Shown here: piece after piece, positions 8,554 to 16,227 of the stretch
Position numbering within the stretch: the stretch's first letter is position 1
How the letters are laid out: each line of letters starts with the position of its first letter
Assembly (NCBI RefSeq): GCF_032062105.1
Contig: NW_026931011.1
Coordinates: 248,001 to 312,000, forward strand
DNA from: Saccostrea cucullata
Taxonomy: Eukaryota
DNA length: 64,000 nt
Reading direction: 5' to 3'
The notes under the pieces: generated by a model
Told to the model about the DNA's origin: nothing
The model's input: the letters and a program-made list of their open reading frames with translations, nothing else
The model's database searches: none
Made by a program: the position numbers and the translations under genes

Positions 8554-11500
8554 TCATCCCTGGACAAGGCCTGGTTTGACCAAGTGAATGGCCATCAGTG
8601 CAGTAGCTACACCGTATATTAGTCCGGCGATGACAGCCAGCGCGAATGACCACGAGAGGGCGCTTCCATTCGCGCCATAAATAATCACACCTAGGAGAGT
8701 AGACCCCGCTGAAAAATTGAAGAAACATTGTATTTTTTAATCGTGAAATGTAGATGATTTTTTCTTCAAAAAGACAAATAGTCAAATAAAAATGTCATTT
8801 ACTGATTTTTATCTTAACAGATAAAAATACTTTTAACGACAAAGGATAAAAACTCAGAAGAAAATTTTAATGTTTTTGTTGAATGACCACATAGCTAAAT
8901 AATTTAAGTTTGGTTGTAACGCGTCATTTGATTGGATAAAAAATTAGTTTATATCGTATAACCTGTGTTGCCTAGGTCACAATGCCTTACGTCAAAGACT
9001 TGTTAATAATCTGTTTGACGTGCTCACTCTGAAGGCATTTTTGGAGAAAATTTTGAATTAATTTAATTTCAAAACTTCAAAATGGAAAATTAATTTATAA
9101 GGAATGACTTTAATGGGTATTCAGGTTATTCTGGTATATCCTGGTTTGGATCAGTTTACGCTTTTTTATAAGCCGTTTCGCTATTTTTGGTTTTTGATAT
9201 GAAATGGGCCTAAAGCTTCTATTATATGACTTACGTATTCTGCTCAATACTTAAAAATGACTGATATTAAAGTACAAGATCAAATATTTAAAATTTCCTT
9301 AATTTGATTTATATTCCACGTACCTAGTGTTATAAATAAGCCCGAACACCAGTTGTGTTGGAATTAATTCATATCTGGAATTTTTCGGAAAATGTATTAA
9401 TTTCCTTCCATTTTCAGAAAATTCCTAAAACGAAAACACTCAAATTTCCTGAAGTCAATAAAAATTGAAATTCTGGTGTCGTTTCACTTGTACTGCGTAT
9501 ATGTACATCTGGTACATGTATAATTAGCTGCAATAATGTAGCCCTCTCCGATTTTTTTTATCTGATGTTTTCTGGAGAGGGCTACAATGCCGCAGAATCT
9601 CCGTAATGGTGCAAATATATTTACGGGTGATTACAGGCAAAATTAATTGTTTTTACATTCAACTTACTTCTAATACATGTAAGTCGGCATCTTTATCATC
9701 GTCAATAAACCCACTCTCCGATTTTTTTTACGATGTTTTTCCTCTCTCCATCTCGTGATGGGAGAGATAACGAAGCAAAATTAATCATTCAACGTGGGTT
9801 TACATGTAATCGGCATCTTTATTCACTTTCAAAAACATAGCCCCACAAACGCGAAAACCATGTGAAATAAATCTGCGTGTTTTCCAGTCGCTCTACTCAG
9901 CAACCATGACAGTTCACGTTTGATGTGCGGAGACTTGCGCTTGAAATTTAGAATAACTCAATAAAGCAAATGTCGGTGTTTATAAATAATTGTAATGAAT
10001 AGCATCACTAAACATTGATAAATAAAACCATTCCATGTATTATTTTTTCGTAAACAGCGACATTTATGCTTAAGGGAATTCCCAAAAGATCCGCTCCTGC
10101 AGATCCTAAATTCTCATTGGCTGTCTCAAAATAAAATCTATCAAGGTCAGTAAACATGGCGGATAAATTCAAATTGTGATGTTGACATACACGAAAAATA
10201 ACCGATATATAGATCGTTCTGTATATTTTTGGATCGATTTATGTCTTGCATAACTACATTTTGGGATTCCAGGTAAGAAATTTTAATAAAATAGACAATT
10301 TGACCTGAAATCTGTGCGGTAGTGAATCACTCCCGCACTTGCACCATTCCGGAGATCCTAAGGAGTTGTAGCCCCCCCCCCCCCCCCCAAAAAAAAGGGG
10401 GGGGGGGAGGGCAAAATTACTGCAGTTAATGAATAATGTAACCGCACGGCAAATACAATTCAAATATCTTCGCAAAGAATAAAGTTCTATGGGTTATTTT
10501 GTCTCCTACACATTTTGTAGACATACTCTTTTCACAGCTCAAATTATAATATTTTAAGGTAATTTTGAAAGAAATCAAAGATTTGGAAAAAATCTGTCTT
10601 TCCTGATTTTGAGCATAACATATTTTATTCCATTTGAGTGTTAATTTTTATCCTTATACAAAATATGATTCAATATTTATTACATTTACATGTTTTTCTG
10701 CATGTCAGAACTTTTGCGAAAACATCCCAAAACAAATGTCCTATTTTTGCGACAGCTTCATCTATCTATGTATGTATACCGTATTTAACGCAAATTAATT
10801 TTTTCAATCCAAAAAACATTCTTTATGCTTGCAAAGAAAGCAAAAATTTGACTATCGCGAATATAACCATAATTTACTACATTTTTCATTCAATGTACTC
10901 TAACCAATTGCTGTTTTTTCTCTGCACTATACCCCAACTTAACCTCAACTTCGGCAATCAATAATATGACGTTACCTATTCCCCGCAAGCACTTCATAGC
11001 ACATCAAGTTACAAATTTCTCTCTAAAATTTAGCTTAGTAATTATGACGTAATATGTTTTTTCTTACTTTATGAAATTTTAGTTAGTTTAAAGAATAGAA
11101 GGGAATTTGCATTAAATTGAAGATTATAAATGTACTTTTGAAAGTGGGTGAAAAATAAGTGATTGCAGGGAAACGGTATAAGCGTGATTTTGCGTTAGAA
11201 ATAGGAAATGGTATATGGGTTAAAAATAATGCATGACTGCGGGGAATGGGGTTAACCCGTCTTCCACGCCACGCATTTGTAGTAGTATTTTGTACCTGCA
11301 ATCCCTACTGCCACAAGACTAATGATGAACAGAACTCGATTTCCCGCTGTTTTGTCTATGAATATATATAGGATGATCAGGATTAGTCCCACAAATCCAC
11401 CAATCAGGCCGATTGTCTCAAAAGCTTGGGTAGCTCCAAACCAACCTATCAAAATAAAAGTCATCATTGAACACAACCAATGAAATTAACGATAGAAAAA

Positions 11501-13879
11501 AGTCGTCATATAGTGCAAGTCTCTGTTATCCTATAGGACTTACAGTAAGGCGTGGTATTCACTGCTGAAATATACACTCGGGCTAATGTCAACGAGTGTA
11601 GCAATGATCCAGTATTTCGTACGGCAAAGAGATGGGGCTTAAGTCGTCTCATCGTTGTCAACAACAGTTTAAAGTTGCTGATGTTATTAATTTCTTAACC
11701 AATGAGAATCTATTCGCCATTTGAGTGACGCTAATTAGGGGTGTCGAGAAAGTCACGCCCTACTGAGAGTCCAAGGTTAACTGAGAATTGTACTAAGATA
11801 CAACCTATCTCAATAACGATACAGTTGTCAAAGGAAAACATCGTTTGCACCTATCAAACTGTTTTCCAGCTATTTCTACAAAACGTGCTGTGATGCAAAA
11901 ATGTATTTAGTGTATATTCGATGAGATGCATATGTTATCTCCCACGAAACTTAATTCCCGCTATCGATGAAATTGTAATATATCAAAATGCTGGGTATCT
12001 CCAAACCAACCGATTAAAAAACGTAGCATCATTCATTCAAAATGTCTGAGCGGATTCAATACAAGTTGAATTGAAAAAAAAACAGTGGAGTTCTATAAAT
12101 GTTAAAAAGCGATCAAAAAATAAAATAAAATCAATGTTGTACCGCTGAGTGAGATTTTGGACTACCGGTATTTTTATCGATGAGATACTGGACCGCTATG
12201 ACGCTTTTTACGTCACACTGTAAGATGTATACATATCAATCATCGTGATCAAGGAAGCTAGTGCAAGATAAGTCAAAATAATAAGGTATAACAAAACATG
12301 CATTGACTGGACAATCGCAAAATGCGTTTTGTTGACCATTCAAACCAAACTGGTTGTTCTTGGATCAAACAAAATGCATGTTGCCCTCGAACTGATGTCA
12401 CGCAATTATGTCAACTGGCCAACAGATACCCCCAAATCAAATATATCAAAACAAGGAATGAATGAAAATTTTTGTGTGTGTCATCATCCAAGCAATCCTA
12501 CATTAAAAAGAAAGAATTCAGCAACAACTCATGGATAACTCATGAGGCAAATATTTTTGGGTTACAATCTGAAAAATGAAGTCAGTGGATGAATTCTGCT
12601 AAGTAGTCTCCGTTTCGAAAAATACTCGAAAAAGTAACGTGTAAATACATGCACTGGGTAACTTAAACGATTCTGTTTTATTTCTAATGTTTATGATGGG
12701 GGATATTAATGTCACCTTCAAAATCCTGAAGTGACTGCCTGCAGACTAACTGAAAAAGGTACATGCGTTTCTATAAATCGCTTAGAAAAAAAGCGTCAGT
12801 TACGCCTTTATGTGTCCCTTTCTACATTTCTGACACACACACATTTATAAAAACATTTGTTACAATGTTCAGAGTAAGTAACAAACTAAAATGTGCAATA
12901 TATGTAGATTTGCATTTCTTAAAGAACGACCAAATGTCATGAACATTTTTTTCAGATGTAGGATAAAGCAATTTGCTGTCTGGTCGAATTCTCTTAACAC
13001 GAAAAGAGATAATATCACTATATATTGTATGCAAATCTCGTTTGTCATCTACGTTATAAATATCAAGAAAAGGTGACGCTATACAAAAAATAATAAGTAA
13101 CATGTGTCTTACAAGAAGACTTTTCAGTGGTGTTTTAAAAACCTTAGTTCTTTGTCTTTACTTAGAACCTTTCAACATACATGCTGACGCTCAGTGCAAT
13201 GACAAAGGAAAGAAGATTTTCTCCCCTCCTCTACACACGCCTACATGCGTGCACGCTCATCAGAAAGATATGAGATGTTTCTTAAGGCTGTATGTACAAA
13301 TCATTTGTTATCCTTCCAGCTGGCTTTGTAATTAAACATGATCGCCCTACTTAATTCGCCCTTTTTTCTTCTGTGGAAATTTGTCTTCTTCTACACACAT
13401 TAAATTGTAAGCAACATTAATTATCATTCCTGAGCATAAAATATGAATATGATATATTCAAGCGTGGTTGGATTGGTTGTATGATTTTCTCATTTAACAA
13501 TTATCATAAAAAGATACAAAATTTTAAACAGAATGATGAAAGCAACAAATACCTTCTGATAAAGCCATATAGAAAGAAGCAACTGTATACATGTATATAT
13601 ATAAGACAAATTTTAAAACAAAACTGAGTGATATTAACAAACCACTATTTCAAGAAGAATCGCGTTATAAAGCTTTTAAACATATATACCGGAACCCGAG
13701 GATACGGAGTAACAGTAAGGCTGACAAATCTTCCAGAGTCCCCAGTGATGGGAGTATACGTATCCGGTCCAATTACTCCAGTAGGCCGTGGAAAATCCCA
13801 CCAGGTGGAACAACACGGCAACAATGACACAGATAAAGGAAATCTTCACCACTAAACTAGAGCTCCCGAATCCCGCCAT
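8554..13879 (-). CDS. Claudin/PMP22/EMP-family tetraspan protein, isoform with proximal first exon (164 aa)
   Basis: Exons 13879-13690, 11445-11296 and 8708-8554, joined by phase-1 GT-AG introns (495 nt). W-x-GLW-x2-C-x-C claudin ECL1 motif, WFGATQAFE at TM2, LSWSFALAV before TM4, four hydrophobic segments. Confidence 0.9.
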
Positions 13880-15385: not shown

Positions 15386-16037
15386 AAATTATATGAAAAA
15401 AGGTCGAGATAATCAACAGGGATATCGGTCTAAGAAATCTACAATCAAAACAAATCTGTGAATGAAGCATAAAACATGGACCCTCGGAAATTCCAGATGT
15501 TGGATCAGGTGTCCAGGAGGAGTAACCATCCCCTGTCGACCGTTACATATGTATGGAGCCCTATGAATCGATCGGTAGACGGAATATCCCAAAGTTAAAT
15601 TAAGTATAGATCTATAAGCAATGATCAGACAATATATAAAACAGGTAACTCAAAATATAACCTACTGTTAGCTTATGTCTGCAACTCAGAACATGCTCTT
15701 AAGTGTGGAACAAGTTGGAAGATGTTTACACCAAAGTGCAGAGGAAAGCAGAAAATAATTACTACAAGAATATCATAGAATCCGTCCATTGTTGGTATGT
15801 TTTTCATGATTTCTACATTTTTAGTTATTCTATGGTTTATATTACAAATTGTATCGACTTTTTTCTTTTCTTCTTTTATTTTAAAGAAAAAAGAAGAAAT
15901 TTGGAGTTTATGTTTCATTTAACTATGTTTCATTCGAAGTGTCAGAAATATTGAAATATAGAGCGATGACAGTAAACAGTTCTTAAAGAGCACGTATAAA
16001 TGAGAATTCTTGGATCCACCTGTTGTCTATGACTCAC

Positions 16038-16227
16038 CTGCTGAGTAGGGATCCTCCAGACAGTGGAATCTAGGCGTAAGGATACACGCCTCCCAAAGTC
16101 CAGTATAAAATACCCCTCCGTCTGACCAATGGTTGGACGAGAATCCAATCACGTGAACAAACACAGATGTCGCAAGGAGAGCAGACGACAATTTAGGGGT
16201 CGACCGGACGTCTAAAAAATCTTCCAT
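16038..16227 (-). CDS. Second (distal) first coding exon of the claudin-like gene: TM1 + ECL1
   Basis: MEDFLDVRSTPKLSSALLATSVFVHVIGFSSNHWSDGGVFYTGLWEACILTPRFHCLEDPYSA G|gtgagt. It is 190 nt and phase 1, identical in length and phase to exon 13879-13690. No private exon 2/3 was seen between 16037 and 13880. Confidence 0.8.

What the first reader, a model, noticed from the sequence alone, without database searches (positions are those of the whole stretch)
8554..16227. Claudin-like gene with two alternative first exons encoding oppositely charged extracellular loops on one shared body
Seen in sequence: two paralogous exons (16227-16038 and 13879-13690) each encode ATG+TM1+ECL1 with the W-GLW-C-C motif. 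Both are exactly 190 nt and end in phase-1 donors. Only one exon 2 (11445-11296) and one exon 3 (8708-8554) were found downstream. The distal ECL1 has four acidic residues and one Arg, while the proximal ECL1 has no acidic residue, one Lys and a His pair. Established knowledge: ECL1 charge sets claudin ion selectivity, and vertebrate CLDN10a/b and CLDN18.1/.2 switch ECL1 through alternative first exons. Inference: this may be an independently evolved variable-exon/constant-region switch for junction permeability in a salinity-tolerant bivalve.
Basis: partly seen in the sequence, partly recalled or inferred. Interest (0 to 1): 0.78.

Follow-up and report, generated by a model that had tools for sequence, protein, structure and literature searches.

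The report
Tetraspan gene with two first exons
A small four-pass membrane protein gene of the PMP22/claudin superfamily is transcribed from two alternative first coding exons, which put two different first outer loops on one shared body; this mirrors vertebrate claudin-10 and claudin-18, but what the switch does here is untested.

Summary
On the minus strand there are two 190-nt ATG-initiated exons (16227-16038 and 13879-13690), one exon 2 (11445-11296) and one exon 3 (8708-8554). Either join gives an open 164-codon frame.

RNA settles the architecture. The junction 13690->11445 appears in three runs. The junction 16038->11445 appears in three runs from three studies, including one 695-nt contig that carries distal exon, exon 2 and a 248-nt continuation. 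Isoform ratios range from 30:0 reads to 0:12 in contig depth. A second haplotype contig keeps both exons and all splice sites. Paralogous loci are ordinary tandem genes, each with its own exons 2 and 3.

The functional reading is weaker. By profile the family sits nearest lens MP20/LIM2 (1e-12) and TARP/calcium-channel gamma subunits, well ahead of classical claudins (2e-4 to 1e-2). The protein has a short tail with no PDZ-type end. The loops are acidic (net -3) versus nearly neutral (+1), not opposite. The proximal loop alone carries an N-glycosylation sequon. The distal mRNA has a weak start context and an overlapping uORF.

A salinity-tuned permeability switch remains speculation. Conservation in other species could not be tested.

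The parts
16038..16227 (-). Distal first coding exon (e1a): ATG, short acidic N-terminus, TM1, and an acidic ECL1 with W34, GLW43-45, C48 and C56. Phase-1 donor CAG|GTGAGT.
   Evidence: Sequence and translation. Joined to 11445 in contigs of X1, X2 and X3. Keeps every invariant column of the family alignment. Open in the second haplotype, with 1 non-synonymous and 1 synonymous difference.
16228..16400 (-). 5' UTR of the distal isoform. It is transcribed continuously with e1a. Contigs run on past the end of the laid stretch by about 145-254 nt, so the start site lies above 16400.
   Evidence: table 8: X1 record 8 (646 nt), X2 record 16 (537 nt) and X3 record 17 (reaches 16334). No joint at the acceptor-like ttttttag at 16233.
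16193..16252 (-). Upstream ORF of 19 codons in the distal 5' UTR, out of frame and overlapping the e1a start codon. A second uATG lies at 16446 (23 codons).
   Evidence: The uATG is kept in the second haplotype (flank print) and in the RNA alleles (variants, table 3).
13690..13879 (-). Proximal first coding exon (e1b): ATG in gggaagATGg context, N-terminus MAGFG typical of the family, TM1, and a near-neutral ECL1 with an N36-W-T sequon, GLW47-49, C52 and C56. Phase-1 donor CCG|GTATAT.
   Evidence: Joined to 11445 in X1, X2 and in 30 raw reads of X21. RNA variants are 10 synonymous and 2 non-synonymous. Best database relatives reach 52% identity.
13880..13983 (-). Presumed short 5' UTR and proximal promoter region of the e1b isoform (inferred).
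   Evidence: raw-read depth in X21 falls from about 32 to about 13 across this bin and to about 2 in the next. No joint links e1b to anything upstream. No polypyrimidine tract precedes the exon.
11296..11445 (-). Shared exon 2: end of ECL1 (GWFGATQAFE), TM2, intracellular loop and start of TM3.
   Evidence: Both junctions land at 11445. The only intact copies in the genome are here and in haplotig C12882.
8554..8708 (-). Shared exon 3 coding part: rest of TM3, short ECL2, TM4, 8-10-residue tail, stop TGA.
   Evidence: The loose end at 11296 (44 reads in X21, 1 contig in X2) maps uniquely to 8679-8708 with one synonymous difference.
13880..16037 (-). Spacer between the two first exons. It is the upstream part of the distal isoform's 4592-nt intron (11446-16037), which also contains e1b. 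It is rich in repeated, highly expressed elements and holds no relic of an exon 2 or 3.
   Evidence: no exon 2/3 match. (very high depths at 13984-15375 from repeats). (88% identity with indels against the other haplotype).

Best explanation
**Shown.** This is one gene of the PMP22/EMP/MP20/claudin superfamily (Pfam PF00822 type), 164 codons in three coding exons, with two alternative first coding exons. Transcripts that start upstream of 16400 carry e1a and splice from 16038 straight to exon 2 at 11445. They skip e1b, which has no acceptor. Other transcripts carry e1b and splice from 13690 to the same exon 2. The two mRNAs encode proteins with identical TM2-TM4 and ECL2, and different N-terminus, TM1 and most of ECL1.

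**Inferred.**
- Each first exon has its own promoter, so isoform choice is transcriptional. The strongly sample-dependent isoform ratio fits this.
- The switch changes the outward face of the tetraspan. The distal loop is acidic (net -3) and has no sequon. The proximal loop is near-neutral and has an N-glycosylation sequon.
- Because the nearest characterised relatives are MP20/LIM2, PMP22/EMP-type adhesion tetraspans and TARP-type auxiliary subunits, the most likely consequence is a change in what the loop binds: a cis or trans adhesion partner, or an associated membrane protein. A change in paracellular ion selectivity is less likely.
- The locus probably arose from a tandem duplicate, the usual state of this family, whose own exons 2 and 3 were lost.
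For: - **Exons and frames:**
- **Junctions:**
  - 11445/13690: X1 contig depth 13.5, X2 2809.7, X21 30 reads from 24 starts.
  - 11445/16038: X1 11.3, X2 95.7, X3 12 with 148 nt on the exon-2 side.
  - All have GT..AG ends.
  - X3 record 17 (695 nt) carries 5' UTR, e1a and exon 2, plus 248 further nt running on from 11296.
  - Intron bins have zero depth, so the runs are RNA.
- **Exon 2 to exon 3 junction:** the loose end maps uniquely to 8679-8708.
- **No joint into e1b from upstream;** distal contigs are unspliced above the ATG.
- **Both haplotype contigs** keep both exons open with intact splice sites.
- **Selection:** e1b RNA variants are 10 synonymous to 2 non-synonymous. In one search's contig records, e1a carries at most about 2 differences per contig in 190 coding nt, against 7 in the adjacent 173 nt of UTR.
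- **e1a keeps** K12, G28, W34, GLW and both Cys, which are invariant in the family alignment.
- **Family:** full-length homologues pass PF00822 (27.5-53 bits against a cut-off of 26.7). Both joined models align end to end with them in a local script (E 1e-24 to 1e-34 against P0031, P0003 and P0002; 6e-14 to 2e-23 against P0011 and P0012).
- **Nearest solved relatives:** MP20/LIM2 1.1e-12 and TARP gamma-2 5e-10, against claudins at 2e-4 or weaker.
- **Paralogous loci** C4475 and C6222 are tandem genes each with its own downstream exons.
Against: - Promoters were not mapped. There were no CAGE or 5'-end data, and the single reads call ended at 16400.
- Protein output of the distal isoform is unproven. 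Its start codon has a weak context (T at -3). An out-of-frame uORF overlaps it and another uATG lies at 16446. Its TM1 is much less hydrophobic than the proximal one (1.55 against 2.74 mean Kyte-Doolittle).
- The distal isoform was absent from the one raw-read run (0 junction reads against 30).
- Conservation of e1a outside this species is unknown. A word search with e1a found nothing, but that is uninformative, because even e1b has no relative above 52% identity in the libraries.
- The binding or adhesion function is inferred from distant homology only.
- Sample identities of the runs are coded, so 'tissue-specific' is a guess.
Confidence: 0.7

Rival explanations
1. The two ECL1 variants set opposite paracellular charge selectivity at epithelial (septate) junctions, as claudin-10a and 10b do, and the switch serves salinity acclimation.
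For: The swapped segment is the same as in CLDN10 and CLDN18 (N-terminus, TM1, ECL1 up to the second Cys). The distal loop has E46 before the Cys pair and E58/D59 after it, plus D36. Claudin-10a/b are established anion and cation channel isoforms (PMC6862131, PMC10970694). Isoform ratios differ greatly between samples.
Against: The family profile is much closer to MP20/LIM2 and TARP/gamma subunits than to claudins. ECL1 is short, with C-x3-C in e1b. There is no C-terminal PDZ-type motif. The proximal loop is near-neutral (+1), not basic. No junction localisation or salinity data are available. No paper on such a switch in molluscs turned up.
Confidence: 0.1
2. e1a is the surviving first exon and promoter of a decayed upstream tandem paralogue. 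Its transcripts splice into the neighbour's exon 2 because nothing else is available. The product is poorly translated or has no function distinct from the main e1b isoform.
For: The family is organised as tandem complete genes. e1a is very divergent (33% identity to e1b, no closer relative in the genome). It has a weak start context, an overlapping uORF and a weakly hydrophobic TM1. It is 29-fold rarer than e1b in X2 and absent from X21. The one amino-acid difference between haplotypes lies in the loop (L50H).
Against: The frame is open in both haplotypes, with a consensus donor. All family-invariant residues are retained, including both Cys, and total loop length is preserved. Coding sequence varies less than the adjacent UTR in the RNA alleles. 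It is the only spliced isoform in X3 and roughly equal to e1b in X1.
Confidence: 0.15
3. There is one promoter with mutually exclusive internal exons, rather than two promoters.
For: An acceptor-like ttttttag lies 6 nt before the e1a ATG. Start sites were not mapped.
Against: Distal contigs run unspliced through that site for at least 170-430 nt. No joint from any upstream exon to e1b was seen. e1b is not preceded by a polypyrimidine tract, and its read depth tapers within about 100 nt of the ATG.
Confidence: 0.03
4. This is an assembly artefact: the distal exon's own exons 2 and 3 are missing from a collapsed or misjoined assembly.
For: The assembly is fragmented (23,869 contigs) and holds haplotype duplicates.
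Against: Two separately assembled haplotype contigs show the same order and number of exons. RNA joins e1a directly to this exon 2, over 148 nt carrying this locus's alleles. The only other exon-2-like sequences in the genome are broken fragments, at 91% identity with one in-frame stop and 81% with two.
Confidence: 0.02

Closest known systems
CLDN10 (claudin-10a / claudin-10b), vertebrates
   Same: Alternative first coding exons, each with its own ATG, encode the N-terminus, TM1 and most of ECL1 and are spliced to a common body. The isoforms differ in ECL1 charge (PMC6862131, PMC10970694). It belongs to the same Pfam superfamily.
   Different: CLDN10 is a classical claudin of about 226-228 aa with a PDZ-binding tail and proven channel function. 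The present protein has 164 aa and no such tail. It has a short ECL1 and sits nearer MP20/TARP by profile. Its proximal loop is neutral rather than basic. Its function is unknown.
CLDN18.1 / CLDN18.2, vertebrates
   Same: Two promoters with alternative first exons give tissue-specific isoforms that differ in ECL1 (PMC11178514). Claudin-18 isoform A2 is among the weak profile matches (6.7e-4).
   Different: It is a classical tight-junction claudin, and its isoform use is known to be lung versus stomach. Here the tissues are unknown and membership of classical claudins fails.
   Same: A small (about 160 aa) tetraspan of the same Pfam family, transcribed from two alternative promoters with alternative first exons. 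It has an N-glycan in ECL1, which the proximal isoform's NWT sequon would allow.
   Different: The alternative first exons of PMP22 are non-coding, so its protein is unchanged. Here the alternative exons are coding and change TM1 and ECL1.
Lens fiber membrane intrinsic protein MP20/LIM2 (PDB 9cbv)
   Same: It is the best solved relative of the family profile, aligned across all four TM segments with the W...hqGLWryC..C motif and a short Cys-Cys spacing (1.1e-12). It is of similar size.
   Different: Similarity is distant, and the match is to a profile of homologues plus the two first exons, not to the spliced protein itself. No alternative coding first exons are known to me for LIM2.
TARP gamma-2 and voltage-gated calcium-channel gamma subunits
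   Same: They are the second-best profile matches (5e-10 to 1e-6). They are tetraspans whose first extracellular loop contacts a partner channel, which offers a model for a loop that sets partner specificity.
   Different: They are much larger proteins with long C-terminal tails. No evidence links the present gene to any channel.

Membership tests
PMP22/EMP/MP20/claudin superfamily (Pfam PF00822) | Whole protein scores above the Pfam gathering cut-off (26.7 bits) | tested here: inconclusive
   The spliced model could not be sent to the scan. Single exons are too short: only e1b gives a sub-threshold Claudin_2 match, 13.7 bits. Homologues found with e1b pass: P0011 53, P0012 49.5, P0002 40.8, P0003 27.5 bits. 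Both joined models align end to end with them in a local script.
PMP22/EMP/MP20/claudin superfamily (Pfam PF00822) | Four hydrophobic segments with a large first extracellular loop and a small second one | tested here: met
   Kyte-Doolittle peaks fall at about residues 9-31, 75-93, 101-119 and 136-154 in both isoforms. TM1 of e1a is weaker (1.55) than TM1 of e1b (2.74).
PMP22/EMP/MP20/claudin superfamily (Pfam PF00822) | ECL1 signature W ... G-L-W ... C ... C | tested here: met
   Present in both first exons. These columns are invariant in alignment A1 and align to the same motif of MP20 and TARP gamma-2.
Classical claudins (tight-junction strand and pore formers) | Closer to claudins than to other branches of the superfamily | tested here: not met
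   Family profile against solved structures: MP20/LIM2 1.1e-12, TARP gamma-2 5e-10, gamma subunits about 1e-6. Claudin-19 2.3e-4, claudin-9 4.5e-4, claudin-18 6.7e-4, claudin-4 0.011.
Classical claudins (tight-junction strand and pore formers) | Cytoplasmic C-terminal tail ending in a PDZ-binding motif (typically -YV); length about 210-230 aa (established knowledge) | tested here: not met
   The model has 164 aa and ends ...HLVKPGLVQG, 8-10 residues after TM4.
Classical claudins (tight-junction strand and pore formers) | ECL1 of about 50 residues with the two Cys 8-10 residues apart (established knowledge) | tested here: not met
   ECL1 is about 35-40 residues. The spacing is C-x7-C in e1a and C-x3-C in e1b, like MP20's short spacing.
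Alternative-first-exon ECL1 switch (CLDN10/CLDN18 type) | Two first exons, each with its own start codon and donor, spliced to the same second exon in real transcripts | tested here: met
   Junctions 11445/13690 and 11445/16038, with GT..AG ends, each in 3 of the 4 runs laid.
Alternative-first-exon ECL1 switch (CLDN10/CLDN18 type) | Separate promoters with differential use | tested here: inconclusive
   The distal UTR is unspliced beyond 16400, there is no joint into e1b, and ratios run from 30:0 to 0:12. Start sites were not mapped and the samples are coded.
Alternative-first-exon ECL1 switch (CLDN10/CLDN18 type) | Isoforms differ in junction permeability or another measurable function | not testable with these tools
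   This needs expression and electrophysiology or adhesion assays.

The most novel reading that the evidence does not exclude
An invertebrate lineage has independently built the claudin-10/18 solution. One tetraspan body takes promoter-selected, differently charged first extracellular loops, which tune the ion selectivity or adhesion of septate junctions in response to tissue or salinity.
Probability: 0.08. Interest if true: 0.75.

Novelty: new member of a known kind. Interest (0 to 1): 0.42.

Why it matters
Vertebrates diversify two claudins by swapping the exon that encodes TM1 and the first extracellular loop. Finding the same gene architecture, with transcript support, in a distant MP20/PMP22-like branch of the superfamily in a mollusc suggests the solution is easy to reach. 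The likely route is a tandem duplicate that loses its downstream exons.

It also gives a natural pair of proteins that differ only in one loop. That is a clean system for asking what the first loop of these poorly understood invertebrate tetraspans does: adhesion, partner binding or permeability. On present evidence it is a tidy, real case of a common mechanism, alternative promoters and first exons, and not a new one.

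Tried and rejected
- **Pfam on single exons**: too short. Only a 13.7-bit Claudin_2 hint for e1b.
- The spliced 164-aa models have no reference, so they were not sent to Pfam, the protein searches, structure prediction or the cluster and contig look-ups. Exons were joined only inside local scripts, for the frame check and for BLAST against proteins already fetched.
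- **Word search with e1a**: no candidate. This is uninformative. The length window excludes full-length proteins, and even e1b has nothing above 52% identity in the representative library.
- **The look-up of encoding contigs on the best hits** P0001 and P0002: only 1-1.9-kb metagenome or Logan contigs, useless for checking a two-exon architecture in other species.
- **Relics of a second exon 2 or 3, or further first exons:** none. The weak WFGDTQHFD match at 12008-11982 (E 0.43) lies downstream of e1b and was judged chance.
- **DNA-level similarity between the two first exons or their flanks**: none, so the duplication is old.
- **NCBIfam**: irrelevant, as it is a prokaryotic library.
- **Literature**: nothing on alternative first exons of claudin-like genes in molluscs.
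- **The 4.6-kb haplotype insertion upstream of e1a**: no ORF of 90 aa or more, left unexplained.

Full report
**1. The observation**

- The distal first exon (e1a, 16227-16038) starts with ATG and ends CAG|GTGAGT.
- The proximal first exon (e1b, 13879-13690) starts with ATG in the context gggaagATGg and ends CCG|GTATAT.
- Both are 190 nt, so both leave phase 1.
- Exon 2 (11445-11296, 150 nt) follows ...ttgatag| and exon 3 (8708-8554) follows ...tttttcag|, ending in TGA.

Either first exon joined to exons 2 and 3 gives an open 495-nt, 164-codon frame (local script).

The two first exons translate to 63 residues each, with W34, G-L-W and two Cys, the second at position 56 in both. They are 33% identical (E 2.5e-4 within the window) and show no similarity at the DNA level or in their flanks.

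The equal length hides compensating indels. The W-to-GLW distance is 4 residues shorter in e1a and the Cys-Cys distance is 4 residues longer.

Loop composition is as reported: 4 Asp/Glu, 1 Arg and 2 His (distal) against 0 Asp/Glu, 1 Lys and 2 His (proximal). That is acidic against near-neutral, not opposite charge.

tblastn with the gene's own exons and with five full-length homologues finds no further first exon and no second exon 2 or 3 anywhere in the 64 kb.

**2. Is it transcribed that way?**

In three contig-based runs from three studies (X1, X2, X3) and one raw-read oligo-dT RNA-seq run (X21), depth sits on the three exons and on some repeats. Plain intron bins are at zero, so these data are RNA.

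| Run | Kept as | 13690->11445 (e1b) | 16038->11445 (e1a) |
|---|---|---|---|
| X1 | contigs | depth 13.5 | depth 11.3 |
| X2 | contigs | depth 2809.7 | depth 95.7 |
| X3 | contigs | none spliced | depth 12 |
| X21 | raw reads | 30 reads, 24 starts | 0 reads |

- Both joints are reported with 'cut +2' and CT..AC ends, which on the minus strand means GT..AG at the predicted bases.
- In X3 the e1a joint has 148 nt, the whole of exon 2, on the far side.
- In X3 e1b appears only as one unspliced piece at depth 2.84.
- X3 record 17 (695 nt) carries 107 nt of 5' UTR, e1a and exon 2, plus 248 more nt.
- The loose end at 11296 (44 reads in X21, one contig in X2) maps uniquely to 8679-8708 with one synonymous change. 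This confirms the exon 2 to exon 3 junction.
- Distal contigs run unspliced above the e1a ATG to the end of the laid stretch and 145-254 nt beyond. The acceptor-like ttttttag at 16233 is therefore not used.
- No joint enters e1b from upstream. In X21 the depth tapers within about 100 nt above its ATG.

The isoform ratio runs from 30:0 (X21) through about 29:1 (X2) and about 1:1 (X1) to 0:12 (X3). That argues for regulated use, though the samples are coded and I cannot name tissues.

**3. Is it an assembly artefact or a relic?**

The window is G000:C13148:248001-312000. A second haplotype-like contig, C12882, carries the same four exons in the same order.
- e1a differs there at 2 nt (L50H and one synonymous).
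- e1b differs at 5 nt (S7A, S14T and three synonymous).
- Exon 2 differs at 2 synonymous nt, and exon 3 not at all.
- All splice sites are intact.

The RNA alleles form at least a third haplotype.
- In e1b, 10 of 12 listed variants are synonymous, and the two replacements lie in the N-terminal part.
- In e1a, the contigs differ from the window at no more than about 2 of 190 coding positions, against 7 in the adjacent 173 nt of UTR (tables 3 and 8).
- In an alignment with five full-length homologues, e1a keeps every invariant column: K12, G28, W34, GLW and both Cys.

This all points to a maintained coding exon. Against that stand several features of the distal mRNA.
- The e1a start has T at -3.
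- A 19-codon out-of-frame uORF (uATG 16252, kept in all haplotypes seen) overlaps it.
- Another uATG lies at 16446.
- TM1 of e1a is much less hydrophobic than TM1 of e1b (1.55 against 2.74).

The distal mRNA may therefore be translated less efficiently.

**4. What family?**

Single exons are too short for Pfam. That joined step is left out.

A full HMMER search with e1b found 31 relatives, the best at 52% identity. The full-length ones pass PF00822 PMP22_Claudin: P0011 53 bits, P0012 49.5, P0002 40.8 and P0003 27.5, against a cut-off of 26.7. In a local script both joined models align with them end to end (E 1e-24 to 1e-34 against P0031, P0003 and P0002; 6e-14 to 2e-23 against P0011 and P0012).

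A profile of these proteins plus the two first exons was compared with the solved structures.

| Match | E-value |
|---|---|
| Lens MP20/LIM2 (9cbv) | 1.1e-12 |
| TARP gamma-2 | 5e-10 |
| Calcium-channel gamma subunits | about 1e-6 |
| Claudin-19 | 2.3e-4 |
| Claudin-9 | 4.5e-4 |
| Claudin-18 | 6.7e-4 |
| Claudin-4 | 0.011 |

The MP20/LIM2 match covers all four TM segments, with the same W...GLW..C..C motif and short Cys spacing. The protein is also small (164 aa), has a short ECL1 and ends ...KPGLVQG shortly after TM4. It is therefore a member of the PMP22/EMP/MP20/claudin superfamily, but it fails the tests for a classical, PDZ-anchored, pore-forming claudin.

**5. Family context and likely origin**

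The genome holds many paralogues. At the two paralogous loci I fetched (C4475 and C6222), two genes stand in tandem. Each first exon there is followed by its own downstream exons, and each first exon ends at the same phase just before the (D/G)WF motif. All three exons were found for both C4475 genes and one C6222 gene; for the other C6222 gene only exons 1 and 2 matched.

The locus in the window is the odd one: two first exons, one body. The simplest history is a tandem duplicate that lost its downstream exons while keeping its promoter and first exon. An exon-1 duplication cannot be excluded. The 33% identity and the absence of any DNA similarity say the event is old.

**6. How it most likely works**

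*Shown.* Two mRNA classes share exons 2 and 3 and differ in the first coding exon. The swapped part is the N-terminus, TM1 and ECL1 up to and beyond the second Cys. The last ECL1 turn (GWFGATQAFE) and everything after it are common.

*Inferred.*
- There are two promoters, so the choice is transcriptional.
- The outward face differs in charge (net -3 against +1) and in a potential N-glycan (N36-W-T in the proximal loop only).
- Given the nearest relatives, I favour a change in adhesion or partner recognition (about 0.3-0.4 of the probability for function).
- A change in paracellular charge selectivity comes next (about 0.1).
- A largely neutral by-product isoform has about 0.15.

**7. Comparison with the known**

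The architecture matches CLDN10a/b (PMC6862131, PMC10970694) and CLDN18.1/.2 (PMC11178514) in which segment is exchanged. PMP22 also has two promoters and two first exons, but non-coding ones (recalled knowledge, not checked here). I found no paper describing such a switch in a mollusc or other invertebrate tetraspan of this family. That is a limited search, not proof of absence. Whether public annotations of this species already list two isoforms could not be checked.

**8. Limits**

- Cross-species conservation could not be tested. The e1a word search was blank but uninformative. The contigs of the nearest hits are 1-2 kb.
- The organism is coded. Another agent's note on this genome speaks of oysters, which I did not verify.
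- No structure was predicted for the spliced proteins.

**9. Verdict**

The gene belongs to the superfamily but is not a classical claudin. The ion-selectivity and salinity story is unsupported. This is a new member of a known kind, of moderate interest.

Noticed in passing
G000:C19279:5886-6094 (L002) and G000:C940:144570-144702 (L003:5570-5702): Dispersed fragment copies of exon 2 together with about 73 nt of its upstream intron (92% and 89% DNA identity). They carry in-frame TGA stops and have no first exon or exon 3 nearby. They look like pseudo-exon fragments moved with other sequence.
   Followed up: partly
window about 16514; C12882:18713-23339 (L005:4714 to L001:2340): The second haplotype contig has about 4.6 kb of extra sequence some 290 bp upstream of the distal ATG, inside or just above the distal 5' UTR or promoter. 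It has no ORF of 90 aa or more. It could cause allele-specific use of the distal exon.
   Followed up: partly
window 13690-13879: Synonymous diversity in the proximal exon is unusually high: 10 synonymous differences in 190 nt between the window and the RNA alleles. The distal exon shows about 1-2 and exon 2 shows 2-3. Several deep haplotypes seem to coexist here.
   Followed up: partly
window 13984-15375 and 11548-11895: Stretches inside the introns have very high summed contig depth in all RNA runs (up to 17,000 in X2), with strand-switch joints and many loose ends. This suggests expressed repeated elements. The spacer between the two first exons is only 80-88% identical, with indels, between the haplotypes.
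   Followed up: no
window 16038-16227 versus 13690-13879: The two first exons have the same length and the same position of the second Cys, despite a 4-residue deletion and a 4-residue insertion relative to each other. This suggests a constraint on total loop length imposed by the shared body.
   Followed up: no
window 21727-24574, minus strand: An hsc70-type gene lies upstream on the same strand. Its last coding exon ends at about 21727, roughly 5 kb above the distal exon. The distal start site must lie between about 16650 and about 21400.
   Followed up: no
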